From assembly GCA_053919585.1 (NCBI GenBank), contig CM132818.1: a stretch of DNA of 64,000 nucleotides; one strand, 5' to 3'. How positions within the stretch are numbered: the first letter of the stretch is position 1; each line of letters begins with the position of its first letter. Below, in pieces: positions 3,722 through 64,000 of the stretch. The position numbers and the translations under genes are program-made. The notes under the pieces are model-generated. The model saw nothing but the letters and a program-made list of their open reading frames with translations, searched no databases and had not been told where the DNA came from. This DNA is from Euprymna scolopes. Taxonomy: Eukaryota.

Positions 3722-3757
3722 GGTCTCAAGATCACACATGCGGCATTGCGGCCGGGG

Positions 3758-7328: not shown

Positions 7329-7343
7329 TTCGCCAAAATAGCT

Positions 7344-17490: not shown

Positions 17491-17937
17491 TATATATTTA
17501 AAAAGAAAAAAAGTTTAGTCCAATAACTATAACTCTGGTATAACACCATTTTTTTTTATACAAAATAAAATATAAATCTTGAGAATACAAATAAATACTG
17601 AAAGTAAAATTTAGCTCAATGGTTTACACACAGTCAAACAGAGCTTATATATTATGCCTCCGTAGAATTCAAAATTTGACATAATTAATATTTTGTAATG
17701 ATACTTTTCAAAATTCAAAGCATCAACAATATTTATCCTCGTGTGCAATTGTGCATATGTTTAAGAAATTTTAATTTATCATTTTTACAACAGTGTAAAA
17801 AATTGACAATTAATCTGTATATCATTGTCAGCACATTATTTATCAATTCAATATTGGTAATATTCAATTGAAATGTTCAATTAATACAAAAATAAAACAA
17901 AGTCTGGAATCTTTTTTTATGACAGGTTAAATAATAC

Positions 17938-19230
17938 TTTTTTATGGAAATCGTGTAAGACAAGGCATAAAGCCAATAAATGTAAGGAAAATGAAAGATG
18001 ATTATTGCAAAGTCAAGAGATGCATTAGTTTTGAAAAGACTAAGGCTGTGGGTAGAAGGAAAACAATGAGCAGGAAGAGAGTTCCACAACCTTGCAATCC
18101 TTGGAAAGAAGTTACTGAAATAAGAAACCATATTATTTACGATAACAAATTGATGAAGAGATCTAAACTAAGTCAAACAGGCTGAACAAAAGAAGCAATG
18201 AGTAGATCAGACAATTCTGAGGAACACACGCCATAATAGAATTTGTAGAAAAGACTGAGACTAGCAACATCACGTTTGTGAAAGAGAGGTTGCAGTGAAA
18301 AAGAAAGGGTGGGGGGGCCAATTAAATTACAGATACGTTTTTGCACCCTTAAATGGGACACAGATTCACTAGCTCAAATATGACAACAGAACGCCATACA
18401 TGGATAGATTTGTAGAGATAGAGAATTGCCTCTGGTGTGAGAAAATGTTAAGAATGATAGAGAGAACCGATTTTACGAGAAGCAAAAATGGATTTAATAT
18501 ATAGACTCCAAAAAAGATTTGATGAGAAAGAACGATCAAAAAGTTTTAGAGTCGATTTCTCATTACGCCATACTTGTTTCCAGAAGTCCAATAACATTTC
18601 CAGTAACCTTCACCATCGACAGTATTTCACAAATATATGAGGGAGGGACCATGTCGTATGCCTTCCTGTAATAGATCCATACTACACTCAAATTCCTCTT
18701 CTTCTTTCCATCCTGCAACACTGCCTTATCAACCATTAGTTGAAGTTTGTTACTCTTGATTTTGCCGGCAGTCTTTTCTGTTCATTAAGGAGAACACCAT
18801 TACTCAAAAGATGGCGATAAACCTTGAAAGACCAAAAAGTTTCAGAGTTGATTTCTTGTTGAATACAGAGCCATCCATAAAACTCTCCGGAAGAAAAGGG
18901 GCATCCCTGAGATTGAAGGACAATAGTTGAGTCTTAACAGGATTAAACGAAACAAGCTTTTTGTTACCCCAATTCATAACTGAACCCAGATCAACTTCTA
19001 AATCAACTGCATATTTGAACTGATCCAAGGAAGATGGGTGAGAAGTAATACCAGAACATTGGGGGGTGTTATCAGCAGAAATGGTGATTCTTTGAATAAT
19101 ATTCTTTGAAAGGTCATTTAGGTAAAGAAGAAATAATGTTGGATCTTGAATAGAGCCCTGGGAAAAAGAAAATGAAGATACTCCATCAAGAGTTACTCAT
19201 AAACTTTGATCAGAAAGAAAAAAAAAACTA
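17938..19230 (-). mobile_element. CR1/L2-group LINE, heavily decayed RT 3' part, running directly into the satellite
   Basis: Minus strand from 19230: FLSDQSL*VTLDGVSS, QGSIQDPTLFLLYLNDL, ISADNT, WGNKKLVSFNPVKTQ, LQPLFHKRDVASLSLFYKFY, FFPRIARLWNSLP; short A-tail at ~17938. Confidence 0.88.
18561..18828 (-). mobile_element. Internal R4/Dong RT fragment inserted into the CR1 copy
   Basis: Reverse complement aligns by eye with 806-1025 (TCAAGGTTTAT..CCATCTTTTGAG..ATGGTTGATAAGGCAGTGTT..GAAGGTTACTGGAAATGTTAT..CTTCTGGAAACAAGTATGGC) and encodes VWIYYRKAYDMVP. Confidence 0.88.
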
Positions 19231-22200
19231 AAGATTATGTAGAAAACCAGGATGTGACACTGTAAAACACTAGTGAAATGTCAAGAACAAATACCATAGC
19301 TTCAAAGATTATGTAGAAAACCAGGATGTGACACTGTAAAACACTAGTGAAATGTCAAGAACAAATACCATAGCTTCAAAGATTATGTAGAAAACCAGGA
19401 TGTGACACTGTAAAACACTAGTGAAATGTCAAGAACAAATACCATAGCCTCAAAAATTATGTAGAAAACCAGGATGTGACACTGTAAAACACTAGTGAAA
19501 TGTCAAGAACAAATACCATAGCTTCAAAGATTATGTAGAAAACCAGGATGTGACACTGTAAAACACTAGTGAAATGTCAAGAACAAATACCATAGCTTCA
19601 AAGATTATGTAGAAAACCAGGATGTGACACTGTAAAACACTAGTGAAATGTCAAGAACAAATACCATAGCCTCAAAGATTATGTAGAAAACCAGGATGTG
19701 ACACTGTAAAACACTAGTGAAATGTCAAGAACAAATACCATAGCCTCAAAAATTATGTAGAAAACCAGGATGTGACACTGTAAAACACTAGTGAAATGTC
19801 AAGAACAAATACCATAGCCTCAAAAATTATGTAGAAAACCAGGATGTGACACTGTAAAACACTAGTGAAATGTCAAGAACAAATACCATAGCTTAAAAGA
19901 TTATGTAGAAAACCAGGATGTGACACTGTAAAACACTAGTGAAATGTCAAGAACAAATACCATAGCCTCAAAAATTATGTAGAAAACCAGGATGTGACAC
20001 TGTAAAACACTAGTGAAATGTCAAGAACAAATACCATAGCCTCAAAAATTATGTAGAAAACCAGGATGTGACACTGTAAAACACTAGTGAAATGTCAAGA
20101 ACAAATACCATAGCCTCAAAAATTATGTAGAAAACCAGGATGTGACACTGTAAAACACTAGTGAAATGTCAAGAACAAATACCATAGCCTCAAAGATTAT
20201 GTAGAAAACCAGGATGTGACACTGTAAAACACTAGTGAAATGTCAAGAACAAATACCATAGCCTCAAAAATTATGTAGAAAACCAGGATGTGACACTGTA
20301 AAACACTAGTGAAATGTCAAGAACAAATACCATAGCCTCAAAAATTATGTAGAAAACCAGGAATTGACACTGTAAAACACTAGTGAAATGTCAAGAACAA
20401 ATACCATAGCCTCAAAAATTATGTAGAAAACCAGGATGTGACATTGTAAAACACTAGTGAAATGTCAAGAACAAATACCATAGCCTCAAAAATTATGTAG
20501 AAAACCAGGATGTGACACTGTAAAACACTAGTGAAATGTCAAGAACAAATACCATAGCTTCAAAGATTATGTAGAAAACCAGGATGTGACACTGTAAAAC
20601 ACTAGTGAAATGTCAAGAACAAATACCATAGCCTCAAAAATTATGTAGAAAACCAGGATGTGACACTGTAAAACACTAGTGAAATGTCAAGAACAAATAC
20701 CATAGCCTCAAAAATTATGTAGAAAACCAGGATGTGACACTGTAAAACACTAGTGAAATGTCAAGAACAAATACCATAGCCTCAAAAATTATGTAGAAAA
20801 CCAGGATGTGACACTGTAAAACACTAGTGAAATGTCAAGAACAAATACCATAGCTTCAAAGATTATGTAGAAAACCAGGATGTGACACTGTAAAACACTA
20901 GTGAAATGTCAAGAACAAATACCATAGCCTCAAAAATTATGTAGAAAACCAGGATGTGACACTGTAAAACACTAGTGAAATGTCAAGAACAAATACCATA
21001 GCCTCAAAAATTATGTAGAAAACCAGGATGTGACACTGTAAAACACTAGTGAAATGTCAAGAACAAATACCATAGCTTCAAAGATTATGTAGAAAACCAG
21101 GATGTGACACTGTAAAACACTAGTGAAATGTCAAGAACAAATACCATAGCCTCAAAAATTATGTAGAAAACCAGGATGTGACACTGTAAAACACTAGTGA
21201 AATGTCAAGAACAAATACCATAGCCTCAAAGATTATGTAGAAAACCAGGATGTGACACTGTAAAACACTAGTGAAATGTCAAGAACAAATACCATAGCCT
21301 CAAAAATTATGTAGAAAACCAGGATGTGACACTGTAAAACACTAGTGAAATGTCAAGAACAAATACCATAGCCTCAAAAATTATGTAGAAAACCAGGATG
21401 TGACACTGTAAAACACTAGTGAAATGTCAAGAACAAATACCATAGCCTCAAAAATTATGTAGAAAACCAGGATGTGACACTGTAAAACACTAGTGAAATG
21501 TCAAGAACAAATACCATAGCCTCAAAAATTATGTAGAAAACCAGGATGTGACACTGTAAAACACTAGTGAAATGTCAAGAACAAATACCATAGCTTCAAA
21601 GATTATGTAGAAAACCAGGATGTGACACTGTAAAACACTAGTGAAATGTCAAGAACAAATACCATAGCCTCAAAAATTATGTAGAAAACCAGGATGTGAC
21701 ACTGTAATACACTAGTGAAATGTCAAGAACAAATACCATAGCCTCAAAAATTATGTAGAAAACCAGGATGTGACACTGTAAAACACTAGTGAAATGTCAA
21801 GAACAAATACCATAGCCTCAAAAATTATGTAGAAAACCAGGATGTGACACTGTAAAACACTAGTGAAATGTCAAGAACAAATACCATAGCTTCAAAGATT
21901 ATGTAGAAAACCAGGATGTGACACTGTAAAACACTAGTGAAATGTCAAGAACAAATACCATAGCCTCAAAAATTATGTAGAAAACCAGGATGTGACACTG
22001 TAAAACACTAGTGAAATGTCAAGAACAAATACCATAGCCTCAAAAATTATGTAGAAAACCAGGATGTGACACTGTAAAACACTAGTGAAATGTCAAGAAC
22101 AAATACCATAGCCTCAAAGATTATGTAGAAAACCAGGATGTGACACTGTAAAACACTAGTGAAATGTCAAGAACAAATACCATAGCCTCAAAAATTATGT

Positions 22201-25200
22201 AGAAAACCAGGATGTGACACTGTAAAACACTAGTGAAATGTCAAGAACAAATACCATAGCCTCAAAGATTATGTAGAAAACCAGGATGTGACACTGTAAA
22301 ACACTAGTGAAATGTCAAGAACAAATACCATAGCCTCAAAAATTATGTAGAAAACCAGGATGTGACACTGTAAAACACTAGTGAAATGTCAAGAACAAAT
22401 ACCATAGCCTCAAAAATTATGTAGAAAACCAGGATGTGACACTGTAAAACACTAGTGAAATGTCAAGAACAAATACCATAGCCTCAAAAATTATGTAGAA
22501 AACCAGGATGTGACACTGTAAAACACTAGTGAAATGTCAAGAACAAATACCATAGCCTCAAAAATTATGTAGAAAACCAGGATGTGACACTGTAAAACAC
22601 TAGTGAAATGTCAAGAACAAATACCATAGCTTCAAAGATTATGTAGAAAACCAGGATGTGACACTGTAAAACACTAGTGAAATGTCAAGAACAAATACCA
22701 TAGCCTCAAAAATTATGTAGAAAACCAGGATGTGACACTGTAAAACACTAGTGAAATGTCAAGAACAAATACCATAGCCTCAAAAATTATGTAGAAAACC
22801 AGGATGTGACACTGTAAAACACTAGTGAAATGTCAAGAACAAATACCATAGCTTCAAAGATTATGTAGAAAACCAGGATGTGACACTGTAAAACACTAGT
22901 GAAATGTCAAGAACAAATACCATAGCCTCAAAGATTATGTAGAAAACCAGGATGTGACACTGTAAAACACTAGTGAAATGTCAAGAACAAATACCATAGC
23001 CTCAAAAATTATGTAGAAAACCAGGATGTGACACTGTAAAACACTAGTGAAATGTCAAGAACAAATACCATAGCCTCAAAAATTATGTAGAAAACCAGGA
23101 TGTGACACTGTAAAACACTAGTGAAATGTCAAGAACAAATACCATAGCTTAAAAGATTATGTAGAAAACCAGGATGTGACACTGTAAAACACTAGTGAAA
23201 TGTCAAGAACAAATACCATAGCCTCAAAGATTATGTAGAAAACCAGGATGTGACACTGTAAAACACTAGTGAAATGTCAAGAACAAATACCATAGCCTCA
23301 AAAATTATGTAGAAAACCAGGATGTGACACTGTAAAACACTAGTGAAATGTCAAGAACAAATACCATAGCTTCAAAGATTATGTAGAAAACCAGGATGTG
23401 ACACTGTAAAACACTAGTGAAATGTCAAGAACAAATACCATAGCCTCAAAAATTATGTAGAAAACCAGGATGTGACACTGTAAAACACTAGTGAAATGTC
23501 AAGAACAAATACCATAGCCTCAAAAATTATGTAGAAAACCAGGATGTGACACTGTAAAACACTAGTGAAATGTCAAGAACAAATACCATAGCTTCAAAGA
23601 TTATGTAGAAAACCAGGATGTGACACTGTAAAACACTAGTGAAATGTCAAGAACAAATACCATAGCCTCAAAAATTATGTAGAAAACCAGGATGTGACAC
23701 TGTAAAACACTAGTGAAATGTCAAGAACAAATACCATAGCCTCAAAAATTATGTAGAAAACCAGGATGTGACACTGTAAAACACTAGTGAAATGTCAAGA
23801 ACAAATACCATAGCCTCAAAAATTATGTAGAAAACCAGGATGTGACACTGTAAAACACTAGTGAAATGTCAAGAACAAATACCATAGCCTCAAAAATTAT
23901 GTAGAAAACCAGGATGTGACACTGTAAAACACTAGTGAAATGTCAAGAAAAAATATCATAGCCTCAAAGATTATGTAGAAAACCAGGATGTGACACTGTA
24001 AAACACTAGTGAAATGTCAAGAACAAATACCATAGCCTCAAAAATTATGTAGAAAACCAGGATGTGACACTGTAAAACACTAGTGAAATGTCAAGAACAA
24101 ATACCATAGCCTCAAAAATTATGTAGAAAACCAGGATGTGACACTGTAAAACACTAGTGAAATGTCAAGAACAAATACCATAGCCTCAAAAATTATGTAG
24201 AAAACCAGGATGTGACACTGTAAAACACTAGTGAAATGTCAAGAACAAATACCATAGCCTCAAAAATTATGTAGAAAACCAGGATGTGACACTGTAAAAC
24301 ACTAGTGAAATGTCAAGAACAAATACCATAGCCTCAAAAATTATGTAGAAAACCAGGATGTGACACTGTAAAACACTAGTGAAATGTCAAGAACAAATAC
24401 CATAGCCTCAAAAATTATGTAGAAAACCAGGATGTGACACTGTAAAACACTAGTGAAATGTCAAGAACAAATACCATAGCCTCAAAAATTATGTAGAAAA
24501 CCAGGATGTGACACTGTAAAACACTAGTGAAATGTCAAGAACAAATACCATAGCCTCAAAAATTATGTAGAAAACCAGGATGTGACACTGTAAAACACTA
24601 GTGAAATGTCAAGAACAAATACCATAGCCTCAAAAATTATGTAGAAAACCAGGATGTGACACTGTAAAACACTAGTGAAATGTCAAGAACAAATACCATA
24701 GCCTCAAAAATTATGTAGAAAACCAGGATGTGACACTGTAAAACACTAGTGAAATGTCAAGAACAAATACCATAGCCTCAAAGATTATGTAGAAAACCAG
24801 GATGTGACACTGTAAAACACTAGTGAAATGTCAAGAACAAATACCATAGCCTCAAAGATTATGTAGAAAACCAGGATGTGACACTGTAAAACACTAGTGA
24901 AATGTCAAGAACAAATACCATAGCCTCAAAGATTATGTAGAAAACCAGGATGTGACACTGTAAAACACTAGTGAAATGTCAAGAACAAATACCATAGCCT
25001 CAAAAATTATGTAGAAAACCAGGATGTGACACTGTAAAACACTAGTGAAATGTCAAGAACAAATACCATAGCCTCAAAAATTATGTAGAAAACCAGGATG
25101 TGACACTGTAAAACACTAGTGAAATGTCAAGAACAAATACCATAGCCTCAAAAATTATGTAGAAAACCAGGATGTGACACTGTAAAACACTAGTGAAATG

Positions 25201-28200
25201 TCAAGAACAAATACCATAGCCTCAAAAATTATGTAGAAAACCAGGATGTGACACTGTAAAACACTAGTGAAATGTCAAGAACAAATACCATAGCCTCAAA
25301 AATTATGTAGAAAACCAGGATGTGACACTGTAAAACACTAGTGAAATGTCAAGAACAAATACCATAGCCTCAAAAATTATGTAGAAAACCAGGATGTGAC
25401 ACTGTAAAACACTAGTGAAATGTCAAGAACAAATACCATAGCCTCAAAAATTATGTAGAAAACCAGGATGTGACACTGTAAAACACTAGTGAAATGTCAA
25501 GAACAAATACCATAGCCTCAAAAATTATGTAGAAAACCAGGATGTGACACTGTAAAACACTAGTAAATGTCAAGAACAAATACCATAGCCTCAAAAATTA
25601 TGTAGAAAACCAGGATGTGACACTGTAAAACACTAGTGAAATGTCAAGAACAAATACCATAGCCTCAAAAATTATGTAGAAAACCAGGATGTGACACTGT
25701 AAAACACTAGTGAAATGTCAAGAACAAATACCATAGCCTCAAAAATTATGTAGAAAACCAGGATGTGACACTGTAAAACACTAGTGAAATGTCAAGAACA
25801 AATACCATAGCCTCAAAGATTATGTAGAAAACCAGGATGTGACACTGTAAAACACTAGTGAAATGTCAAGAACAAATACCATAGCCTAAAAGATTATGTA
25901 GAAAACCAGGATGTGACACTGTAAAACACTAGTGAAATGTCAAGAACAAATACCATAGCCTCAAAAATTATGTAGAAAACCAGGATGTGACACTGTAAAA
26001 CACTAGTGAAATGTCAAGAACAAATACCATAGCCTCAAAAATTATGTAGAAAACCAGGATGTGACACTGTAAAACACTAGTGAAATGTCAAGAACAAATA
26101 CCATAGCCTCAAAAATTATGTAGAAAACCAGGATGTGACACTGTAAAACACTAGTGAAATGTCAAGAACAAATACCATAGCCTCAAAAATTATGTAGAAA
26201 ACCAGGATGTGACACTGTAAAACACTAGTGAAATGTCAAGAACAAATACCATAGCCTCAAAAATTATGTAGAAAACCAGGATGTGACACTGTAAAACACT
26301 AGTGAAATGTCAAGAACAAATACCATAGCCTCAAAAATTATGTAGAAAACCAGGATGTGACACTGTAAAACACTAGTGAAATGTCAAGAACAAATACCAT
26401 AGCCTCAAAAATTATGTAGAAAACCAGGATGTGACACTGTAAAACACTAGTGAAATGTCAAGAACAAATACCATAGCCTCAAAGATTATGTAGAAAACCA
26501 GGATGTGACACTGTAAAACACTAGTGAAATGTCAAGAACAAATACCATAGCTTCAAAGATTATGTAGAAAACCAGGATGTGACACTGTAAAACACTAGTG
26601 AAATGTCAAGAACAAATACCATAGCCTCAAAGATTATGTAGAAAACCAGGATGTGACACTGTAAAACACTAGTGAAATGTCAAGAACAAATACCATAGCC
26701 TCAAAAATTATGTAGAAAACCAGGATGTGACACTGTAAAACACTAGTGAAATGTCAAGAACAAATACCATAGCCTAAAAAATTATGTAGAAAACCAGGAT
26801 GTGACACTGTAAAACACTAGTGAAATGTCAAGAACAAATACCATAGCTTCAAAGATTATGTAGAAAACCAGGATGTGACACTGTAAAACACTAGTGAAAT
26901 GTCAAGAACAAATACCATAGCCTCAAAAATTATGTAGAAAACCAGGATGTGACACTGTAAAACACGAGTGAAATGTCAAGAACAAATACCATAGCCTCAA
27001 AGATTATGTAGAAAACCAGGATGTGACACTGTAAAACACTAGTGAAATGTCAAGAACAAATACCATAGCCTCAAAGATTATGTAGAAAACCAGGATGTGA
27101 CACTGTAAAACACTAGTGAAATGTCAAGAACAAATACCATAGCCTCAAAGATTATGTAGAAAACCAGGATGTGACACTGTAAAACACTAGTGAAATGTCA
27201 AGAACAAATACCATAGCCTCAAAAATTATGTAGAAAACCAGGATGTGACACTGTAAAACACTAGTGAAATGTCAAGAACAAATACCATAGCCTCAAAAAT
27301 TATGTAGAAAACCAGGATGTGACACTGTAAAACACTAGTGAAATGTCAAGAACAAATACCATAGCCTCAAAAATTATGTAGAAAACCAGGATGTGACACT
27401 GTAAAACACTAGTGAAATGTCAAGAACAAATACCATAGCCTCAAAAATTATGTAGAAAACCAGGATGTGACACTGTAAAACACTAGTGAAATGTCAAGAA
27501 CAAATACCATAGCCTCAAAAATTATGTAGAAAACCAGGATGTGACACTGTAAAACACTAGTGAAATGTCAAGAACAAATACCATAGCCTCAAAAATTATG
27601 TAGAAAACCAGGATGTGACACTGTAAAACACTAGTGAAATGTCAAGAACAAATACCATAGCCTCAAAAATTATGTAGAAAACCAGGATGTGACACTGTAA
27701 AACACTAGTGAAATGTCAAGAACAAATACCATAGCCTCAAAAATTATGTAGAAAACCAGGATGTGACACTGTAAAACACTAGTAAATGTCAAGAACAAAT
27801 ACCATAGCCTCAAAAATTATGTAGAAAACCAGGATGTGACACTGTAAAACACTAGTGAAATGTCAAGAACAAATACCATAGCCTCAAAAATTATGTAGAA
27901 AACCAGGATGTGACACTGTAAAACACTAGTGAAATGTCAAGAACAAATACCATAGCCTCAAAAATTATGTAGAAAACCAGGATGTGACACTGTAAAACAC
28001 TAGTGAAATGTCAAGAACAAATACCATAGCCTCAAAGATTATGTAGAAAACCAGGATGTGACACTGTAAAACACTAGTGAAATGTCAAGAACAAATACCA
28101 TAGCCTAAAAGATTATGTAGAAAACCAGGATGTGACACTGTAAAACACTAGTGAAATGTCAAGAACAAATACCATAGCCTCAAAAATTATGTAGAAAACC

Positions 28201-31200
28201 AGGATGTGACACTGTAAAACACTAGTGAAATGTCAAGAACAAATACCATAGCCTCAAAAATTATGTAGAAAACCAGGATGTGACACTGTAAAACACTAGT
28301 GAAATGTCAAGAACAAATACCATAGCCTCAAAAATTATGTAGAAAACCAGGATGTGACACTGTAAAACACTAGTGAAATGTCAAGAACAAATACCATAGC
28401 CTCAAAAATTATGTAGAAAACCAGGATGTGACACTGTAAAACACTAGTGAAATGTCAAGAACAAATACCATAGCCTCAAAAATTATGTAGAAAACCAGGA
28501 TGTGACACTGTAAAACACTAGTGAAATGTCAAGAACAAATACCATAGCCTCAAAAATTATGTAGAAAACCAGGATGTGACACTGTAAAACACTAGTGAAA
28601 TGTCAAGAACAAATACCATAGCCTCAAAAATTATGTAGAAAACCAGGATGTGACACTGTAAAACACTAGTGAAATGTCAAGAACAAATACCATAGCCTCA
28701 AAGATTATGTAGAAAACCAGGATGTGACACTGTAAAACACTAGTGAAATGTCAAGAACAAATACCATAGCTTCAAAGATTATGTAGAAAACCAGGATGTG
28801 ACACTGTAAAACACTAGTGAAATGTCAAGAACAAATACCATAGCCTCAAAGATTATGTAGAAAACCAGGATGTGACACTGTAAAACACTAGTGAAATGTC
28901 AAGAACAAATACCATAGCCTCAAAAATTATGTAGAAAACCAGGATGTGACACTGTAAAACACTAGTGAAATGTCAAGAACAAATACCATAGCCTCAAAAA
29001 TTATGTAGAAAACCAGGATGTGACACTGTAAAACACTAGTGAAATGTCAAGAACAAATACCATAGCTTCAAAGATTATGTAGAAAACCAGGATGTGACAC
29101 TGTAAAACACTAGTGAAATGTCAAGAACAAATACCATAGCCTCAAAAATTATGTAGAAAACCAGGATGTGACACTGTAAAACACGAGTGAAATGTCAAGA
29201 ACAAATACCATAGCCTCAAAGATTATGTAGAAAACCAGGATGTGACACTGTAAAACACTAGTGAAATGTCAAGAACAAATACCATAGCCTCAAAAATTAT
29301 GTAGAAAACCAGGATGTGACACTGTAAAACACTAGTGAAATGTCAAGAACAAATACCATAGCCTCAAAGATTATGTAGAAAACCAGGATGTGACACTGTA
29401 AAACACTAGTGAAATGTCAAGAACAAATACCATAGCCTCAAAAATTATGTAGAAAACCAGGATGTGACACTGTAAAACACTAGTGAAATGTCAAGAACAA
29501 ATACCATAGCCTCAAAGATTATGTAGAAAACCAGGATGTGACACTGTAAAACACTAGTGAAATGTCAAGAACAAATACCATAGCCTCAAAAATTATGTAG
29601 AAAACCAGGATGTGACACTGTAAAACACTAGTGAAATGTCAAGAACAAATACCATAGCCTCAAAGATTATGTAGAAAACCAGGATGTGACACTGTAAAAC
29701 ACTAGTGAAATGTCAAGAACAAATACCATAGCCTCAAAAATTATGTAGAAAACCAGGATGTGACACTGTAAAACACTAGTGAAATGTCAAGAACAAATAC
29801 CATAGCTTCAAAGATTATGTAGAAAACCAGGATGTGACACTGTAAAACACTAGTGAAATGTCAAGAACAAATACCATAGCCTCAAAGATTATGTAGAAAA
29901 CCAGGATGTGACACTGTAAAACACTAGTGAAATGTCAAGAACAAATACCATAGCCTCAAAAATTATGTAGAAAACCAGGATGTGACACTGTAAAACACTA
30001 GTGAAATGTCAAGAACAAATACCATAGCCTCAAAGATTATGTAGAAAACCAGGATGTGACACTGTAAAACACTAGTGAAATGTCAAGAACAAATACCATA
30101 GCCTCAAAAATTATGTAGAAAACCAGGATGTGACACTGTAAAACACTAGTGAAATGTCAAGAACAAATACCATAGCCTCAAAGATTATGTAGAAAACCAG
30201 GATGTGACACTGTAAAACACTAGTGAAATGTCAAGAACAAATACCATAGCCTCAAAAATTATGTAGAAAACCAGGATGTGACACTGTAAAACACGAGTGA
30301 AATGTCAAGAACAAATACCATAGCCTCAAAGATTATGTAGAAAACCAGGATGTGACACTGTAAAACACTAGTGAAATGTCAAGAACAAATACCATAGCCT
30401 CAAAAATTATGTAGAAAACCAGGATGTGACACTGTAAAACACTAGTGAAATGTCAAGAACAAATACCATAGCCTCAAAGATTATGTAGAAAACCAGGATG
30501 TGACACTGTAAAACACTAGTGAAATGTCAAGAACAAATACCATAGCCTCAAAAATTATGTAGAAAACCAGGATGTGACACTGTAAAACACTAGTGAAATG
30601 TCAAGAACAAATACCATAGCTTCAAAGATTATGTAGAAAACCAGGATGTGACACTGTAAAACACTAGTGAAATGTCAAGAACAAATACCATAGCCTCAAA
30701 GATTATGTAGAAAACCAGGATGTGACACTGTAAAACACTAGTGAAATGTCAAGAACAAATACCATAGCCTCAAAAATTATGTAGAAAACCAGGATGTGAC
30801 ACTGTAAAACACTAGTGAAATGTCAAGAACAAATACCATAGCCTCAAAAATTATGTAGAAAACCAAGATGTGACACTGTAAAACACTAGTGAAATGTCAA
30901 GAACAAATACCATAGCCTCAAAAATTATGTAGAAAACCAGGATGTGACACTGTAAAACACTAGTGAAATGTCAAGAACAAATACCATAGCCTCAAAAATT
31001 ATGTAGAAAACCAGGATGTGACACTGTAAAACACTAGTGAAATGTCAAGAACAAATACCATAGCCTCAAAAATTATGTAGAAAACCAGGATGTGACACTG
31101 TAAAACACTAGTGAAATGTCAAGAACAAATACCATAGCCTCAAAAATTATGTAGAAAACCAGGATGTGACACTGTAAAACACTAGTGAAATGTCAAGAAC

Positions 31201-52200: not shown

Positions 52201-55200
52201 GAACAAATACCATAGCTTCAAATATTATGTAGAAAACCAGGATGTGACACTGTAAAACACTAGTGAAATGTCAAGAACAAATACCATAGCTTCAAAGATT
52301 ATGTAGAAAACCAGGATGTGACACTGTAAAACACTAGTGAAATGTCAAGAACAAATACCATAGCTTCAAAGATTATGTAGAAAACCAGGATGTGACACTG
52401 TAAAACACTAGTGAAATGTCAAGAACAAATACCATAGCTTCAAAGATTATGTAGAAAACCAGGATGTGACACTGTAAAACACTAGTGAAATGTCAAGAAC
52501 AAATACCATAGCTTCAAAAATTATGTAGAAAACCAGGATGTGACACTGTAAAACACTAGTGAAATGTCAAGAACAAATACCATAGCTTCAAAGATTATGT
52601 AGAAAACCAGGATGTGACACTGTAAAACACTAGTGAAATGTCAAGAACAAATACCATAGCTTCAAAGATTATGTAGAAAACCAGGATGTGACACTGTAAA
52701 ACACTAGTGAAATGTCAAGAACAAATACCATAGCTTCAAAGATTATGTAGAAAACCAGGATGTGACACTGTAAAACACTAGTGAAATGTCAAGAACAAAT
52801 ACCATAGCTTCAAAAATTATGTAGAAAACCAGGATGTGACACTGTAAAACACTAGTGAAATGTCAAGAACAAATACCATAGCTTCAAAGATTATGTAGAA
52901 AACCAGGATGTGACACTGTAAAACACTAGTGAAATGTCAAGAACAAATACCATAGCTTCAAAAATTATGTAGAAAACCAGGATGTGACACTGTAAAACAC
53001 TAGTGAAATGTCAAGAACAAATACCATAGCTTCAAAGATTATGTAGAAAACCAGGATGTGACACTGTAAAACACTAGTGAAATGTCAAGAACAAATACCA
53101 TAGCTTCAAAGATTATGTAGAAAACCAGGATGTGACACTGTAAAACACTAGTGAAATGTCAAGAACAAATACCATAGCTTCAAAGATTATGTAGAAAACC
53201 AGGATGTGACACTGTAAAACACTAGTGAAATGTCAAGAACAAATACCATAGCTTCAAAGATTATGTAGAAAACCAGGATGTGACACTGTAAAACACTAGT
53301 GAAATGTCAAGAACAAATACCATAGCTTCAGAGATTATGTAGAAAACCAGGATGTGACACTGTAAAACACTAGTGAAATGTACAGAACAAATACCATAGC
53401 TTCAAATATTATGTAGAAAACCAGGATGTGACACTGTAAAACACTAGTGAAATGTCAAGAACAAATACCATAGCTTCAAAGATTATGTAGAAAACCAGGA
53501 TGTGACACTGTAAAACACTAGTGAAATGTGAAGAACAAATACCATAGCTTCAAAGATTATGTAGAAAACCAGGATGTGACACTGTAAAACACTAGTGAAA
53601 TGTCAAGAACAAATACCATAGCTTCAAAGATTATGTAGAAAACCAGGATGTGACACTGTAAAACACTAGTGAAATGTCAAGAACAAATACCATAGCTTCA
53701 AAAATTATGTAGAAAACCAGGATGTGACACTGTAAAACACTAGTGAAATGTCAAGAACAAATACCATAGCTTCAAAGATTATGTAGAAAACCAGGATGTG
53801 ACACTGTAAAACACTAGTGAAATGTCAAGAACAAATACCATAGCTTCAAAGATTATGTAGAAAACCAGGATGTGACACTGTAAAACACTAGTGAAATGTC
53901 AAGAACAAATACCATAGCTTCAAAGATTATGTAGAAAACCAGGATGTGACACTGTAAAACACTAGTGAAATGTCAAGAACAAATACCATAGCTTCAAAAA
54001 TTATGTAGAAAACCAGGATGTGACACTGTAAAACACTAGTGAAATGTCAAGAACAAATACCATAGCTTCAAAGATTATGTAGAAAACCAGGATGTGACAC
54101 TGTAAAACACTAGTGAAATGTCAAGAACAAATACCATAGCTTCAAAGATTATGTAGAAAACCAGGATGTGACACTGTAAAACACTAGTGAAATGTCAAGA
54201 ACAAATACCATAGCTTCAAAGATTATGTAGAAAACCAGGATGTGACACTGTAAAACACTAGTGAAATGTCAAGAACAAATACCATAGCTTCAAAGATTAT
54301 GTAGAAAACCAGGATGTGACACTGTAAAACACTAGTGAAATGTCAAGAACAAATACCATAGCCTCAAAAATTATGTAGAAAACCAGGATGTGACACTGTA
54401 AAACACTAGTGAAATGTCAAGAACAAATACCATAGCCTCAAAAATTATGTAGAAAACCAGGATGTGACACTGTAAAACACTAGTGAAATGTCAAGAACAA
54501 ATACCATAGCCTCAAAAATTATGTAGAAAACCAGGATGTGACACTGTAAAACACTAGTGAAATGTCAAGAACAAATACCATAGCCTCAAAAATTATGTAG
54601 AAAACCAGGATGTGACACTGTAAAACACTAGTGAAATGTCAAGAACAAATACCATAGCCTCAAAAATTATGTAGAAAACCAGGATGTGACACTGTAAAAC
54701 ACTAGTGAAATGTCAAGAACAAATACCATAGCCTCAAAAATTATGTAGAAAACCAGGATGTGACACTGTAAAACACTAGTGAAATGTCAAGAACAAATAC
54801 CATAGCCTCAAAGATTATGTAGAAAACCAGGATGTGACACTGTAAAACACTAGTGAAATGTCAAGAACAAATACCATAGCCTCAAAAATTATGTAGAAAA
54901 CCAGGATGTGACACTGTAAAACACTAGTGAAATGTCAAGAACAAATACCATAGCCTCAAAAATTATGTAGAAAACCAGGATGTGACACTGTAAAACACTA
55001 GTGAAATGTCAAGAACAAATACCATAGCCTCAAAAATTATGTAGAAAACCAGGATGTGACACTGTAAAACACTAGTGAAATGTCAAGAACACATACCATA
55101 GCCTCAAAAATTATGTAGAAAACCAGGATGTGACACTGTAAAACACTAGTGAAATGTCAAGAACAAATACCATAGCCTCAAAGATTATGTAGAAAACCAG

Positions 55201-58200
55201 GATGTGACACTGTAAAACACTAGTGAAATGTCAAGAACAAATACCATAGCTTCAAAAATTATGTAGAAAACCAGGATGTGACACTGTAAAACACTAGTGA
55301 AATGTCAAGAACAAATACCATAGCCTCAAAAATTATGTAGAAAACCAGGATGTGACACTGTAAAACACTAGTGAAATGTCAAGAACAAATACCATAGCTT
55401 CAAAGATTATGTAGAAAACCAGGATGTGACACTGTAAAACACTAGTGAAATGTCAAGAACAAATACCATAGCCTCAAAAATTATGTAGAAAACCAGGATG
55501 TGACACTGTAAAACACTAGTGAAATGTCAAGAACAAATACCATAGCCTCAAAAATTATGTAGAAAACCAGGATGTGACACTGTAAAACACTAGTGAAATG
55601 TCAAGAACAAATACCATAGCCTCAAAAATTATGTAGAAAACCAGGATGTGACACTGTAAAACACTAGTGAAATGTCAAGAACAAATACCATAGCCTCAAA
55701 AATTATGTAGAAAACCAGGATGTGACACTGTAAAACACTAGTGAAATGTCAAGAACAAATACCATAGCCTCAAAAATTATGTAGAAAACCAGGATGTGAC
55801 ACTGTAAAACACTAGTGAAATGTCAAGAACAAATACCATAGCTTCAAAGATTATGTAGAAAACCAGGATGTGACACTGTAAAACACTAGTGAAATGTCAA
55901 GAACAAATACCATAGCCTCAAAAATTATGTAGAAAACCAGGATGTGACACTGTAAAACACTAGTGAAATGTCAAGAACAAATACCATAGCCTCAAAAATT
56001 ATGTAGAAAACCAGGATGTGACACTGTAAAACACTAGTGAAATGTCAAGAACAAATACCATAGCCTCAAAAATTATGTAGAAAACCAGGATGTGACACTG
56101 TAAAACACTAGTGAAATGTCAAGAACAAATACCATAGCCTCAAAAATTATGTAGAAAACCAGGATGTGACACTGTAAAACACTAGTGAAATGTCAAGAAC
56201 AAATACCATAGCCTCAAAAATTATGTAGAAAACCAGGATGTGACACTGTAAAACACTAGTGAAATGTCAAGAACAAATACCATAGCCTCAAAAATTATGT
56301 AGAAAACCAGGATGTGACACTGTAAAACACTAGTGAAATGTCAAGAACAAATACCATAGCCTCAAAAATTATGTAGAAAACCAGGATGTGACACTGTAAA
56401 ACACTAGTGAAATGTCAAGAACAAATACCATAGCTTCAAAGATTATGTAGAAAACCAGGATGTGACACTGTAAAACACTAGTGAAATGTCAAGAACAAAT
56501 ACCATAGCCTCAAAAATTATGTAGAAAACCAGGATGTGACACTGTAAAACACTAGTGAAATGTCAAGAACAAATACCATAGCCTCAAAAATTATGTAGAA
56601 AACCAGGATGTGACACTGTAAAACACTAGTGAAATGTCAAGAACAAATACCATAGCCTCAAAAATTATGTAGAAAACCAGGATGTGACACTGTAAAACAC
56701 TAGTGCAATGTCAAGAACAAATACCATAGCTTCAAAGATTATGTAGAAAACCAGGATGTGACACTGTAAAACACTAGTGAAATGTCAAGAACAAATACCA
56801 TAGCCTCAAAAATTATGTAGAAAACCAGGATGTGACACTGTAAAACACTAGTGAAATGTCAAGAACAAATACCATAGCCTCAAAAATTATGTAGAAAACC
56901 AGGATGTGACACTGTAAAACACTAGTGAAATGTCAAGAACAAATACCATATCCTCAAAAATTATGTAGAAAACCAGGATGTGACACTGTAAAACACTAGT
57001 GAAATGTCAAGAACAAATACCATAGCCTCAAAAATTATGTAGAAAACCAGGATGTGACACTGTAAAACACTAGTGAAATGTCAAGAACAAATACCATAGC
57101 CTCAAAAATTATGTAGAAAACCAGGATGTGACACTGTAAAACACTAGTGAAATGTCAAGAACAAATACCATAGCTTCAAAGATTATGTAGAAAACCAGGA
57201 TGTGACACTGTAAAACACTAGTGAAATGTCAAGAACAAATACCATAGCCTCAAAAATTATGTAGAAAACCAGGATGTGACACTGTAAAACACTAGTGAAA
57301 TGTCAAGAACAAATACCATAGCCTCAAAAATTATGTAGAAAACCAGGATGTGACACTGTAAAACACTAGTGAAATGTCAAGAACAAATACCATAGCCTCA
57401 AAAATTATGTAGAAAACCAGGATGTGACACTGTAAAACACTAGTGAAATGTCAAGAACAAATACCAAAGCTTCAAAGATTATGTAGAAAACCAGGATGTG
57501 ACACTGTAAAACACTAGTGAAATGTCAAGAACAAATACCATAGCCTCAAAAATTATGTAGAAAACCAGGATGTGACACTGTAAAACACTAGTGAAATGTC
57601 AAGAACAAATACCATAGCCTCAAAAATTATGTAGAAAACCAGGATGTGACACTGTAAAACACTAGTGAACTGTCAAGAACAAATACCATATCCTCAAAAA
57701 TTATGTAGAAAACCAGGATGTGACACTGTAAAACACTAGTGAAATGTCAAGAACAAATACCATAGCCTCAAAAATTATGTAGAAAACCAGGATGTGACAC
57801 TGTAAAACACTAGTGAAATGTCAAGAACAAATACCATAGCCTCAAAAATTATGTAGAAAACCAGGATGTGACACTGTAAAACACTAGTGAAATGTCAAGA
57901 ACAAATACCATAGCCTCAAAAATTATGTAGAAAACCAGGATGTGACACTGTAAAACACTAGTGAAATGTCAAGAACAAATACCATAGCTTCAAAGATTAT
58001 GTAGAAAACCAGGATGTGACACTGTAAAACACTAGTGAAATGTCAAGAACAAATACCATAGCTTCAAAGATTATGTAGAAAACCAGGATGTGACACTGTA
58101 AAACACTAGTGAAATGTCAAGAACAAATACCATAGCTTCAAAGATTATGTAGAAAACCAGGATGTGACACTGTAAAACACTAGTGAAATGTCAAGAACAA

Positions 58201-61200
58201 ATACCATAGCCTCAAAAATTATGTAGAAAACCAGGATGTGACACTGTAAAACACTAGTGAAATGTCAAGAACAAATACCATAGCCTCAAAAATTATGTAG
58301 AAAACCAGGATGTGACACTGTAAAACACTAGTGAAATGTCAAGAACAAATACCATAGCCTCAAAAATTATGTAGAAAACCAGGATGTGACACTGTAAAAC
58401 ACTAGTGAAATGTCAAGAACAAATACCATAGCCTCAAAAATTATGTAGAAAACCAGGATGTGACACTGTAAAACACTAGTGAAATGTCAAGAACAAATAC
58501 CATAGCCTCAAAAATTATGTAGAAAACCAGGATGTGACACTGTAAAACACTAGTGAAATGTCAAGAACAAATACCATATCCTCAAAAATTATGTAGAAAA
58601 CCAGGATGTGACACTGTAAAACACTAGTGAAATGTCAAGAACAAATACCATAGCTTCAAAGATTATGTAGAAAACCAGGATGTGACACTGTAAAACACTA
58701 GTGAAATGTCAAGAACAAATACCATAGCTTCAAAGATTATGTAGAAAACCAGGATGTGACACTGTAAAACACTAGTGAAATGTCAAGAACAAATACCATA
58801 GCCTCAAAAATTATGTAGAAAACCAGGATGTGACACTGTAAAACACTAGTGAAATGTCAAGAACAAATACCATAGCCTCAAAAATTATGTAGAAAACCAG
58901 GATGTGACACTGTAAAACACTAGTGAAATGTCAAGAACAAATACCATAGCCTCAAAAATTATGTAGAAAACCAGGATGTGACACTGTAAAACACTAGTGA
59001 AATGTCAAGAACAAATACCATAGCTTCAAAGATTATGTAGAAAACCAGGATGTGACACTGTAAAACACTAGTGAAATGTCAAGAACAAATACCATAGCTT
59101 CAAAGATTATGTAGAAAACCAGGATGTGACACTGTAAAACACTAGTGAAATGTCAAGAACAAATACCATAGCCTCAAAAATTATGTAGAAAACCAGGATG
59201 TGACACTGTAAAACACTAGTGAAATGTCAAGAACAAATACCATAGCCTCAAAAATTATGTAGAAAACCAGGATGTGACACTGTAAAACACTAGTGAAATG
59301 TCAAGAACAAATACCATAGCTTCAAAGATTATGTAGAAAACCAGGATGTGACACTGTAAAACACTAGTGAAATGTCAAGAACAAATACCATAGCCTCAAA
59401 AATTATGTAGAAAACCAGGATGTGACACTGTAAAACACTAGTGAAATGTCAAGAACAAATACCATAGCCTCAAAAATTATGTAGAAAACCAGGATGTGAC
59501 ACTGTAAAACACTAGTGAAATGTCAAGAACAAATACCATAGCCTCAAAAATTATGTAGAAAACCAGGATGTGACACTGTAAAACACTAGTGCAATGTCAA
59601 GAACAAATACCAAAGCTTCAAAGATTATGTAGAAAACCAGGATGTGACACTGTAAAACACTAGTGAAATGTCAAGAACAAATACCATAGCCTCAAAAATT
59701 ATGTAGAAAACCAGGATGTGACACTGTAAAATACTAGTGAAATGTCAAGAACAAATACCATAGCCTCAAAAATTATGTAGAAAACCAGGATGTGACACTG
59801 TAAAACACTAGTGAACTGTCAAGAACAAATACCATATCCTCAAAAATTATGTAGAAAACCAGGATGTGACACTGTAAAACACTAGTGAAATGTCAAGAAC
59901 AAATACCATAGCCTCAAAAATTATGTAGAAAACGAGGATGTGACACTGTAAAACACTAGTGAAATGTCAAGAACAAATACCATAGCCTCAAAAATTATGT
60001 AGAAAACCAGGATGTGACACTGTAAAACACTAGTGAAATGTCAAGAACAAATACCATAGCCTCAAAAATTATGTAGAAAACCAGGATGTGACACTGTAAA
60101 ACACTAGTGAAATGTCAAGAACAAATACCATAGCTTCAAAGATTATGTAGAAAACCAGGATGTGACACTGTAAAACACTAGTGAAATGTCAAGAACAAAT
60201 ACCATAGCCTCAAAAATTATGTAGAAAACCAGGATGTGACACTGTAAAACACTAGTGAAATGTCAAGAACAAATACCATAGCCTCAAAAATTATGTAGAA
60301 AACCAGGATGTGACACTGTAAAACACTAGTGAAATGTCAAGAACAAATACCATATCCTCAAAAATTATGTAGAAAACCAGGATGTGACACTGTAAAACAC
60401 TAGTGAAATGTCAAGAACAAATACCATAGCTTCAAAGATTATGTAGAAAACCAGGATGTGACACTGTAAAACACTAGTGAAATGTCAAGAACAAATACCA
60501 TAGCTTCAAAGATTATGTAGAAAACCAGGATGTGACACTGTAAAACACTAGTGAAATGTCAAGAACAAATACCATAGCCTCAAAAATTATGTAGAAAACC
60601 AGGATGTGACACTGTAAAACACTAGTGAAATGTCAAGAACAAATACCATAGCCTCAAAAATTATGTAGAAAACCAGGATGTGACACTGTAAAACACTAGT
60701 GAAATGTCAAGAACAAATACCATAGCCTCAAAAATTATGTAGAAAACCAGGATGTGACACTGTAAAACACTAGTGAAATGTCAAGAACAAATACCATAGC
60801 CTCAAAAATTATGTAGAAAACCAGGATGTGACACTGTAAAACACTAGTGAAATGTCAAGAACAAATACCATAGCCTCAAAAATTATGTAGAAAACCAGGA
60901 TGTGACACTGTAAAACACTAGTGAAATGTCAAGAACAAATACCATATCCTCAAAAATTATGTAGAAAACCAGGATGTGACACTGTAAAACACTAGTGAAA
61001 TGTCAAGAACAAATACCATAGCTTCAAAGATTATGTAGAAAACCAGGATGTGACACTGTAAAACACTAGTGAAATGTCAAGAACAAATACCATAGCTTCA
61101 AAGATTATGTAGAAAACCAGGATGTGACACTGTAAAACACTAGTGAAATGTCAAGAACAAATACCATAGCCTCAAAAATTATGTAGAAAACCAGGATGTG

Positions 61201-64000
61201 ACACTGTAAAACACTAGTGAAATGTCAAGAACAAATACCATAGCCTCAAAAATTATGTAGAAAACCAGGATGTGACACTGTAAAACACTAGTGAAATGTC
61301 AAGAACAAATACCATAGCCTCAAAAATTATGTAGAAAACCAGGATGTGACACTGTAAAACACTAGTGAAATGTCAAGAACAAATACCATAGCCTCAAACA
61401 TTATGTAGAAAACCAGGATGTGACCCTGTAAAACACTAGTGAAATGTCAAGAACAAATACCATAGCTTCAAAGATTATGTAGAAAACCAGGATGTGACAC
61501 TGTAAAACACTAGTGAAATGTCAAGAACAAATACCATAGCTTCAAAGATTATGTAGAAAACCAGGATGTGACACTGTAAAACACTAGTGAAATGTCAAGA
61601 ACAAATACCATAGCCTCAAAAATTATGTAGAAAACCAGGATGTGACACTGTAAAACACTAGTGAAATGTCAAGAACAAATACCATAGCCTCAAAAATTAT
61701 GTAGAAAACCAGGATGTGACACTGTAAAACACTAGTGAAATGTCAAGAACAAATACCATAGCCTCAAAAATTATGTAGAAAACCAGGATGTGACACTGTA
61801 AAACACTAGTGAAATGTCAAGAACAAATACCATAGCCTCAAAAATTATGTAGAAAACCAGGATGTGACACTGTAAAACACTAGTGAAATGTCAAGAACAA
61901 ATACCATAGCCTCAAAAATTATGTAGAAAACCAGGATGTGACACTGTAAAACACTAGTGAAATGTCAAGAACAAATACCATATCCTCAAAAATTATGTAG
62001 AAAACCAGGATGTGACACTGTAAAACACTAGTGAAATGTCAAGAACAAATACCATAGCTTCAAAGATTATGTAGAAAACCAGGATGTGACACTGTAAAAC
62101 ACCAGTGAAATGTCAAGAACAAATACCATAGCTTCAAAGATTATGTAGAAAACCAGGATGTGACACTGTAAAACACTAGTGAAATGTCAAGAACAAATAC
62201 CATACCCTCAAAAATTATGTAGAAAACCAGGATGTGACACTGTAAAACACTAGTGAAATGTCAAGAACAAATACCATAGCCTCAAAAATTATGTAGAAAA
62301 CCAGGATGTGACACTGTAAAACACTAGTGAAATGTCAAGAACAAATACCATATCCTCAAAAATTATGTAGAAAACCAGGATGTGACACTGTAAAACACTA
62401 GTGAAATGTCAAGAACAAATACCATAGCTTCAAAGATTATGTAGAAAACCAGGATGTGACACTGTAAAACACTAGTGAAATGTCAAGAACAAATACCATA
62501 GCTTCAAAGATTATGTAGAAAACCAGGATGTGACACTGTAAAACACTAGTGAAATGTCAAGAACAAATACCATAGCCTCAAAAATTATGTAGAAAACCAG
62601 GATGTGACACTGTAAAACACTAGTGAAATGTCAAGAACAAATACCATAGCCTCAAAAATTATGTAGAAAACCAGGATGTGACACTGTAAAACACTAGTGA
62701 AATGTCAAGAACAAATACCATAGCCTCAAAAATTATGTAGAAAACCAGGATGTGACACTGTAAAACACTAGTGAAATGTCAAGAACAAATACCATAGCTT
62801 CAAAGATTATGTAGAAAACCAGGATGTGACACTGTAAAACACTAGTGAAATGTCAAGAACAAATACCATAGCTTCAAAGATTATGTAGAAAACCAGGATG
62901 TGACACTGTAAAACACTAGTGAAATGTCAAGAACAAATACCATAGCCTCAAAAATTATGTAGAAAACCAGGATGTGACACTGTAAAACACTAGTGAAATG
63001 TCAAGAACAAATACCATAGCCTCAAAAATTATGTAGAAAACCAGGATGTGACACTGTAAAACACTAGTGAAATGTCAAGAACAAATACCATATCCTCAAA
63101 AATTATGTAGAAAACCAGGATGTGACACTGTAAAACACTAGTGAAATGTCAAGAACAAATACCATAGCTTCAAAGATTATGTAGAAAACCAGGATGTGAC
63201 ACTGTAAAACACTAGTGAAATGTCAAGAACAAATACCATAGCTTCAAAGATTATGTAGAAAACCAGGATGTGACACTGTAAAACACTAGTGAAATGTCAA
63301 GAACAAATACCATAGCCTCAAAAATTATGTAGAAAACCAGGATGTGACACTGTAAAACACTAGTGAAATGTCAAGAACAAATACCATAGCCTCAAAAATT
63401 ATGTAGAAAACCAGGATGTGACACTGTAAAACACTAGTGAAATGTCAAGAACAAATACCATATCCTCAAAAATTATGTAGAAAACCAGGATGTGACACTG
63501 TAAAACACTAGTGAAATGTCAAGAACAAATACCATAGCTTCAAAGATTATGTAGAAAACCAGGATGTGACACTGTAAAACACTAGTGAAATGTCAAGAAC
63601 AAATACCATAGCTTCAAAGATTATGTAGAAAACCAGGATGTGACACTGTAAAACACTAGTGAAATGTCAAGAACAAATACCATAGCCTCAAAAATTATGT
63701 AGAAAACCAGGATGTGACACTGTAAAACACTAGTGAAATGTCAAGAACAAATACCATAGCCTCAAAAATTATGTAGAAAACCAGGATGTGACACTGTAAA
63801 ACACTAGTGAAATGTCAAGTACAAATACCATAGCTTCAGAGATTATGTAGAAAACCAGGATGTGACACTGTAAAACACTAGTGAAATATCAAGAACAAAT
63901 ACCATAGCCTCAAAAATTATGTAGAAAACCAGGATGTGACACTGTAAAACACTAGTGAAATGTCAAGAACAAATACCATAGCCTCAAAAATTATGTAGAA
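19230..64000. repeat. 74-bp tandem satellite array, ~605 copies, continuing past the window end
   Basis: Consensus AA[A/G]ATTATGTAGAAAACCAGGATGTGACACTGTAAAACACTAGTGAAATGTCAAGAACAAATACCATAGC[C/T]TCA; head-to-tail, one orientation, no insertions seen; ~34% GC, ~45% A, no CpG in the consensus. Confidence 0.99.

What the first reader, a model, noticed from the sequence alone, without database searches (positions are those of the whole stretch)
17938..64000. A >44-kb satellite amplified from inside a LINE reverse-transcriptase ORF, with the parent LINE still attached
Seen: the monomer reverse complement reads GAA GCT ATG GTA TTT GTT CTT GAC ATT TCA CTA GTG TTT TAC AGT GTC a CAT CCT GGT TTT CTA CAT AAT CTT, i.e. 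EAMVFVLDISLVFYSV/HPGFLHNL with one frameshift. Known: CR1/L2-group RTs carry ExxxVALDISKAFDRVWHxGLLHKL just before SFLSDR..V.VDG..PQGS..LFLLYINDL..YADD. The related copy at ~12050-12180 in this window reads KAFDRVWHKGLLHKISSYG..SFLSDRFIRVVVDG. The sequence just left of 19230 continues on the same strand with FLSDQSL*VTLDG..QGS..LFLLYLNDL. Inference: the array arose in place by tandem amplification of 74 bp of this dead LINE copy, so this is the birth site of a satellite derived from RT coding sequence rather than from an LTR or UTR.
Basis: partly seen in the sequence, partly recalled or inferred. Interest (0 to 1): 0.88.

Follow-up and report, generated by a model that had tools for sequence, protein, structure and literature searches.

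The report
Satellite born inside one dead LINE
A 62.6-kb block of about 846 near-identical 74-base repeats grew in place out of a short piece of the reverse-transcriptase gene of one old, broken jumping element, whose two halves still flank it; this is an unusually clean example of a known way that satellite DNA arises.

Summary

- **Array.** A 74-bp array starts at 19230 and runs past the window end to extended coordinate 81875. That is 62.6 kb and about 846 units.
- **Host element.** The array lies inside one 5'-truncated copy of an abundant CR1-like LINE on the minus strand.
- **Origin of the unit.** The unit matches the RT motif-A region (LDISKAFDRVWHPGLLHKLRGYGI) of 31 paralogous copies at a median 79% identity. 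The two flanks are about as diverged (82% and 77%).
- **Junctions.** Both flanks are collinear LINE sequence. The near junction lacks about 30-38 bp.
- **Single locus.** All 841 genome-wide matches to the unit's wrap-around junction lie in this one array, out of a 5.9-Gb assembly.
- **Unit boundaries.** The unit probably spans two CTTGACATT direct repeats of the ORF.
- **Age.** Units differ by 0.5-1.7%, against about 20% between LINE copies, so the expansion is recent or homogenised.
- **Function.** No coding capacity, no poly(A) RNA reads and no evidence of function were found.

LINE-ORF2-derived satellites are already described, so this is a new member of a known kind. Its value is the preserved birth site.

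The parts
19230..64000 (-). The part of the 74-bp tandem array that lies in the window. The array continues to extended coordinate 81875 (L022:7875; G000:C36:63507230-63569875), for a total of 62.6 kb and about 846 units. In LINE sense each unit reads from the LDIS codons to the YGI codons of the RT.
   Evidence: TRF; k-mer walk and far end; unit segmentation into 834 units of 74 bp and 82 distinct unit sequences.
18826..19229 (-). LINE RT segment immediately downstream of the array (FLSDQSL*VTLDG, QGS, LFLLYLNDL; degenerate, with stops). Between the last unit and FLSDQ it lacks about 30-38 bp that the paralogs have.
   Evidence: Translation; 75-82% identity to 40 scored genomic copies; alignment; paralog coverage profile.
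18565..18825 (.). 261-bp foreign insertion splitting the LINE 3' part. It is absent from all paralogs and is flanked by a duplication of about 30-35 bp of LINE sequence.
   Evidence: Paralog coverage drops to zero over 18575-18825, and the two LINE halves overlap by about 35 bp in paralog coordinates; sequence.
17938..18564 (-). 3' part of the same LINE copy, down to its 3' end (..FFPRIARLWNSLP.., ending in CCATAAAAAA).
   Evidence: Many paralog alignments end at 17938; the 3' ends of 14 paralogs stop at the same short A-run; ORF 17877..18131.

Best explanation
An old, 5'-truncated copy of an abundant CR1-like LINE inserted here on the minus strand. It is about 1.2 kb without the array, with its 3' end at 17938 and its 5' end at extended coordinate 81986. 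Much later, a short internal piece of its decayed reverse-transcriptase ORF was duplicated in tandem and then expanded in place to about 846 units (62.6 kb). That piece covers RT motif A through the YGI codons. The first duplication most likely joined two copies of the 9-mer CTTGACATT that the ORF carries 84 bp apart (the codons of A-LDI-S and V-LDI-I), by slipped-strand mispairing or unequal exchange. Small deletions of 2 bp and 8 bp then gave the 74-bp unit. This first step is inferred. Later growth was by unequal exchange of multi-unit blocks, which is shown by duplicated blocks inside the array. The array no longer codes for anything and shows no sign of function. It is a young, single-locus satellite caught at its birth site.
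For: - **Flanks and order.** Both flanks are LINE sequence, on the same strand and in the right order. In the paralogs the order is distal flank, unit homologue, proximal flank, abutting one another.
- **Distal junction.** It is exactly in register, with HSPs crossing it at 81-82% over about 180 bp.
- **Wrap-around point.** The unit's CTTTGAGGCTATGGTATT matches the parental sequence that follows LHKL. GTT+CTTGACATT then matches the downstream site, while the distal flank keeps the upstream GCA+CTTGACATT.
- **Ancestral 9-mer.** Most paralogs carry CTTGACATT at both sites.
- **Equal divergence.** The unit is about as diverged from paralogs (median 0.79) as the flanks are (0.82 and 0.77).
- **RT identity.** Paralog pieces covering the region hit Pfam RVT_1 above the gathering score (37.6-43.4 bits against 29.6), which places the unit at about profile positions 68-95.
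- **Single locus.** All 841 of 841 and 806 of 806 diagnostic matches are inside this array.
- **Low unit diversity.** Mean pairwise difference is 1.67%, or 0.47% without two dimorphic sites.
- **Block duplications.** One run of 26 units is identical at lag 29 and one of 17 units at lag 22. Patterns of about 100 units also recur.
- **Slippage-prone spot.** The same place in the ORF is expanded in other copies, to a 335-bp minisatellite in L008 and to 42 bp in L003.
- **Independent data.** Contigs from runs in at least two other studies of the same organism hold the satellite words. One 104-bp contig spans more than one unit without a difference.
Against: - The near junction is not perfectly collinear. 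About 30-38 bp are missing between the last unit and FLSDQ, so a second event must be assumed.
- The exact breakpoints of the first duplication are ambiguous. A boundary at the imperfect microhomology GGT(C)ATTG needs about as many extra changes as the CTTGACATT model.
- Array length and continuity rest on the assembly alone. The read-laying run could not measure copy number, because satellite contigs were largely filtered.
- No allele or related species with a single unit could be examined.
- Low unit divergence could reflect homogenisation rather than youth.
Confidence: 0.9

Rival explanations
1. The first tandem duplication arose during retrotransposition, when the LINE reverse transcriptase switched template at the CTTGACATT microhomology. 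The copy would then have inserted already carrying two or more units, and only the later expansion happened at the DNA level.
For: Other copies of the family carry short tandem expansions at the same spot. A 9-bp direct repeat is a plausible site for template switching.
Against: No other genomic copy carries the diagnostic recombinant junction, so no master copy carried it. Units are 10-40 times less diverged from each other than the LINE copy is from its relatives, so the bulk of the growth came long after insertion. The expansions in L008 and L003 have different periods and fit DNA slippage equally well.
Confidence: 0.08
2. The satellite arose elsewhere, or is carried by a mobile element, and was inserted into or next to a LINE copy here.
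For: None found. TE-borne satellite-like arrays are known in molluscs (PMC7492417).
Against: The unit itself is LINE sequence from exactly the gap between the two flanks. The distal junction is in register. No other locus in 5.9 Gb holds the unit junction.
Confidence: 0.02
3. The array is real, but its size or internal order is partly an assembly artefact (collapsed or inflated).
For: Homogeneous 74-bp arrays are hard to assemble. Array length was not checked against raw long reads. Laid contigs gave no usable depth over the array.
Against: The array has 82 distinct unit sequences in a non-random long-range order, with domains and block duplications. There are no gaps (N = 0), and both junctions are clean.
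Confidence: 0.1
4. The array is a functional satellite (centromeric, or a regulatory or piRNA source) and not a neutral by-product.
For: None direct. Its size and homogeneity are compatible with either view.
Against: It occupies a single locus on one chromosome, at 63.5 of 97.8 Mb. No reads fell on the array in the poly(A) RNA run that was laid. The surroundings are ordinary TE-rich sequence on both sides.
Confidence: 0.05

Closest known systems
PROsat of Phodopus roborovskii and Pvc20 of the harbour seal (satellites related to LINE-1 ORF2), as listed in the review PMC9659126
   Same: The satellite monomer derives from the ORF2 (RT-containing) coding region of a LINE, not from an LTR, TIR or UTR.
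   Different: Those are L1-derived in mammals. Here the source is a CR1-like LINE in a mollusc, the array is single-locus, and the donor copy is still attached on both sides.
Chicken HinfI repeat with an embedded CR1 (Li & Leung 2006, cited in PMC9659126)
   Same: CR1-group LINE sequence, including part of ORF2, forms part of a tandem repeat.
   Different: There a CR1 fragment (3' UTR plus partial ORF2) is embedded in a larger repeat unit. Here the whole 74-bp unit is a piece of the RT ORF and the parent copy flanks the array.
Sobo satellite of potato (Tek et al. 2005, cited in PMC9659126)
   Same: A young, single-locus satellite partly derived from a retrotransposon, used as a model for satellite birth (my own knowledge for the single-locus detail).
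   Different: Sobo has a 4.7-kb unit with LTR-related sequence in a plant. Here a 74-bp unit comes from coding sequence.
Common cetacean satellite and Drosophila 18HT/HeT-A-derived satellites (PMC9659126)
   Same: Satellites derived from non-LTR retrotransposons.
   Different: Those derive from 3'-terminal or non-coding parts and are multi-locus or centromeric.

Membership tests
Satellite DNA (long homogeneous head-to-tail array) | Tandem head-to-tail units, tens of kb long, with high inter-unit identity | tested here: met
   Period 74 with 98% matches; 62.6 kb and about 846 units; mean pairwise difference 1.67%.
Satellite DNA (long homogeneous head-to-tail array) | Presence at many loci or chromosomes (usual for classical satellites, not obligatory) | tested here: not met
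   All genome-wide matches to the diagnostic junction patterns lie in this one array.
Transposable-element-derived satellite | The unit is significantly homologous to a defined part of a TE family | tested here: met
   Identity of 0.71-0.89 to 31 paralogs; 27 of 31 beat all shuffles; E = 6e-12 in the whole-genome search.
Transposable-element-derived satellite | In-situ origin: both flanks continue the donor TE collinearly | tested here: met
   The distal junction is in register. The proximal flank is collinear after a 30-38-bp deletion.
LINE reverse-transcriptase coding sequence | The region matches the Pfam RVT_1 profile | tested here: met
   The attached copy is too decayed (0 families). Paralog pieces covering the same region score 37.6-43.4 bits against a cut-off of 29.6, and the unit maps to about profile positions 68-95.
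CR1 clade of LINEs | Phylogenetic placement of the RT within the CR1 clade; apurinic-type endonuclease; clade-typical 3' end | not tested
   Only motif-level resemblance was seen (ALDISKAFD..WH.GLL.KL, SFLSDR, FFPR..RLWNSLP), judged from my own knowledge. The family ends in a short A-run, CCATAAAAAA, not the octamer microsatellite of vertebrate CR1. No tree was built and no endonuclease was examined.
Centromeric satellite | Shared by the centromeres of most chromosomes; bound by CENP-A | tested here: not met
   Single locus. CENP-A binding is not testable with these tools.

The most novel reading that the evidence does not exclude
In this very large mollusc (probably cephalopod) genome, decayed LINE reverse-transcriptase ORFs are a recurrent seed of large single-locus satellites. 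Short direct repeats inside conserved RT motifs, together with a slippage-prone YGIGG-coding stretch, would act as a built-in hotspot. This locus would then be one of several independent births. That would allow the rate and mechanism of satellite origin to be measured from many caught-in-the-act loci.
Probability: 0.25. Interest if true: 0.6.

Novelty: new member of a known kind. Interest (0 to 1): 0.4.

Why it matters
Satellite birth is usually inferred long after the event, when the donor and the junctions are gone. Here the donor copy, both junctions, the probable 9-bp direct repeats that seeded the first duplication, and the block-wise growth pattern can all be read in one locus. The satellite also exists nowhere else in a 5.9-Gb assembly. 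That makes it a clean natural example for models of how tandem arrays start and grow. It also adds to the short list of satellites derived from TE coding sequence; according to the review PMC9659126, most TE-derived satellites come from LTRs, TIRs or UTRs. It does not change the concept, and no function is indicated.

Tried and rejected
- **Pfam on the attached copy.** The pieces of the attached LINE copy gave nothing (one search failed on stop codons). The paralogs had to be used instead.
- **Read laying.** This was meant to test presence, copy number and transcription.
  - The LINE part is swamped by paralogous contigs.
  - The main satellite contigs were evidently filtered, so no copy number could be derived.
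  - The only usable results are a 104-bp contig spanning more than one unit, near-identical unique-flank contigs in organisms A and B, and zero poly(A) RNA reads on the array in 12% of one run.
- **Satellite in organism B.** This is unresolved. B showed low depth and is not listed as a holder.
- **BLAST of the array against its own genome.** The search did not return the array itself, because common words are skipped.
- **Target-site duplication.** None could be recognised for the LINE copy, by inspection.
- **Earlier notes of the scan.** Nothing was recorded near this place and the word search was blank.
- **Literature.** A search for named 'LINE-derived satellite' phrases found nothing. A search on cephalopod satellites found nothing specific.
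- **LINE clade.** It was not tested, and the large protein searches were not spent on it.
- **Coding potential.** The array has stops in all three frames, and 74 is not a multiple of 3, so a coding reading was rejected.

Full report
**1. The observation**

Tandem Repeats Finder reports a single array from 19230 to the window end, with period 74, 605 copies and 98% matches. Base composition is flat across it.

- The reverse-complemented unit reads EAMVFVLDISLVFYSV and, one frame over, SHPGFLHNL.
- The sequence left of 19230 reads FLSDQSL*VTLDG..SQGS..LFLLYLNDL on the minus strand.
- A second, better-preserved LINE at 12041-12211(+) reads SKAFDRVWHKGLLHKISSYGVAGNVFSIIKSFLSDRFIRVVVDG.

**2. The donor family**

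The window is G000:C36:63488001-63552000 of a 5.9-Gb assembly. Metagenome labels among the run hits and earlier notes point to a mollusc, probably a cephalopod. The organism itself is coded.

The 400 bp next to the array belong to a very abundant LINE family. The first look gave 2520 candidates, and the 40 that were scored are 75-82% identical to this copy. This copy's 3' end is at 17938, where many paralog alignments stop. The family ends in a short A-run.

A 261-bp foreign piece (18565-18825), flanked by a duplication of about 30-35 bp, splits the 3' part. The attached copy is too decayed for Pfam. Stop-free pieces of paralogs covering the same region hit RVT_1 above the gathering score (37.6-43.4 bits against 29.6). 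That places the unit at roughly profile positions 68-95, which is RT motif A (xLDISKAFD) and the following WHPGLLHKL.

**3. The unit is LINE sequence**

BLAST of the last units plus flank against 19 paralog loci places the unit directly upstream of the FLSDQ-homologous region, on the same strand. A MAFFT alignment shows it column by column.

Against 31 paralogs the unit is 0.71-0.89 identical (median about 0.79). The distal flank is about 0.82 identical and the proximal flank about 0.77. The unit is therefore as old as its flanks.

In the paralogs the three pieces lie in the order distal, unit, proximal, abutting one another. Shuffled units score 22.3 +/- 2.5 (maximum 36) against an observed median of 63, and 27 of 31 paralogs exceed every shuffle.

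**4. The far end**

I fetched 100 kb beyond the window. The array ends at extended coordinate 81875, which is L022:7875 or G000:C36:63569875.

The next 111 bp are the upstream RT of the same LINE on the same strand. These are decayed QYGF..ST.DLLT..GRVIA codons, and they run exactly in register into the first unit at CTTGACATT.

Single HSPs of about 180 bp at 81-82% identity (E down to 2e-44) cross the junction, and alignment A1 shows it. Similarity to the paralogs stops at 81986, so the copy is 5'-truncated there. This explains why YRPISLL is absent.

**5. Unit boundaries and first step**

In the family, LHKL is followed by GAGGTTATGGTATT GGTGGTAAAGTT CTTGACATT ATTAGG..TTTCTGATCAA. The unit wraps from ..CTTTGAGGCTATGGTATT through TGTT into CTTGACATTTCAC.

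The unit therefore runs from the upstream CTTGACATT (A-LDI-S) to just before the downstream CTTGACATT (V-LDI-I). These two sites are 84 bp apart in the paralogs. The distal flank keeps the upstream context (GCA before the 9-mer), while the units carry the downstream context (GTT).

An 8-bp loss and a 2-bp loss bring 84 bp down to 74 bp. The 2-bp loss (AGAG to AG) also occurs in some paralogs.

An alternative breakpoint at the imperfect microhomology GGT(C)ATTG costs about as many changes, so the breakpoint is inferred and not shown.

The near junction lacks about 30-38 bp relative to the family, which requires a later deletion.

Two paralogs carry independent short expansions at the same TATGGTATT spot: 335 bp in L008 and 42 bp in L003. 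This suggests a slippage-prone stretch.

**6. Single locus**

The wrap-around junction (28-mer, up to 2 mismatches) occurs 841 times in the genome, and all 841 are in this array. A looser gapped pattern, which would detect any recombinant between the two sites, occurs 806 times, again all of them here. BLAST with the array finds only ordinary LINE copies elsewhere.

**7. Internal structure and age**

There are 834 units of exactly 74 bp and 82 distinct unit sequences.

| Type | State at the two dimorphic sites | Units |
|---|---|---|
| A | T,G | 474 |
| B | C,A | 206 |
| C | C,G | 116 |
| D | T,A | 28 |

Type C matches the family state at both sites and is also the first distal unit.

The types form domains and repeated multi-unit patterns. 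One run of 26 units is exactly identical at lag 29 and one of 17 units at lag 22. Patterns of about 100 units recur near the distal end. This indicates growth by unequal exchange of blocks.

Mean pairwise difference is 1.67%, or 0.47% without the two dimorphic sites. LINE copies differ from one another by about 20%. The edges are no more diverged than the centre. The expansion is therefore recent or strongly homogenised.

**8. Function and context**

- All three frames of the unit carry stops, and 74 is not a multiple of three.
- In the one read-laying run, a poly(A) RNA run (12% read) gave no reads on the array.
- A 104-bp contig from another run spans more than one unit without a difference.
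- Satellite words occur in runs from at least two other studies of the same organism.
- Copy number could not be derived from that call.
- Both sides of the locus are ordinary TE-rich sequence with no other large array within 82 kb. The elements seen are an LTR retrotransposon, a mariner, other LINEs and a U2-like sequence.

**9. Comparison with what is known**

The review PMC9659126 states that TE-derived satellites come mostly from LTRs, TIRs and UTRs. It also lists ORF-derived cases: PROsat and Pvc20 (L1 ORF2) and the chicken HinfI repeat (CR1 3' UTR plus partial ORF2).

This locus is therefore a new member of a known kind. Its distinguishing features are the intact birth site, the single-locus status and the readable seeding repeats.

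First-stage notes of this scan claim several other LINE-born satellites in the same genome. I could not locate or test them. They motivate the more novel reading that such births are recurrent here.

**Verdict**

Confidence in in-situ origin is 0.9, and confidence in the specific first-step mechanism is about 0.5. Interest is moderate.

Noticed in passing
window 18565-18825: A 261-bp insertion inside the LINE 3' part. It is absent from all 19+ paralogs and is flanked by a duplication of about 30-35 bp of LINE sequence (18532-18564 against 18826-18860, imperfect). Its minus-strand translation resembles another RT fragment (..KAYDMVP..). The unusually long target duplication is unexplained.
   Followed up: partly
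L008:1933-2267 and L003:1437-1478: Other copies of the same LINE family carry independent short tandem expansions at the same TATGGTATT (YGIGG-coding) spot of the RT ORF where the 74-bp unit wraps. They have periods of 8, 17 and 42, reaching 335 bp in L008.
   Followed up: partly
window 14049-14206 (-) and 14159-14694: A U2 snRNA-like sequence just above the Rfam gathering score (49.6 against 46 bits). It overlaps a 246-bp tandem repeat of 2.2 copies, so it may be a U2 pseudogene or a U2-derived repeat.
   Followed up: partly
window about 3300-7840 (-): An LTR retrotransposon with gag (zf-CCHC), a DUF7047 domain and an integrase (rve). An identical 56-bp TRF hit at 3329-3384 and at 7447-7502 marks the two LTRs.
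   Followed up: partly
window 9964-10938 (+): A mariner-type transposase ORF of 324 aa (Transposase_1, HTH_48).
   Followed up: partly
window 11710-13100 (+) and L025:3362-5959 (-): Two copies of a second, better-preserved CR1-like LINE subfamily (SKAFDRVWHKGLLHKISSYG..), distinct from the satellite's donor family.
   Followed up: no
same genome, other windows (notes s1-272059, s1-244933, s1-272099, s1-244858): First-stage notes claim other satellites of 9-37 kb born from LINE RT ORFs or LINE 3' ends in this genome. If verified, LINE-seeded satellite birth would be recurrent here.
   Followed up: no
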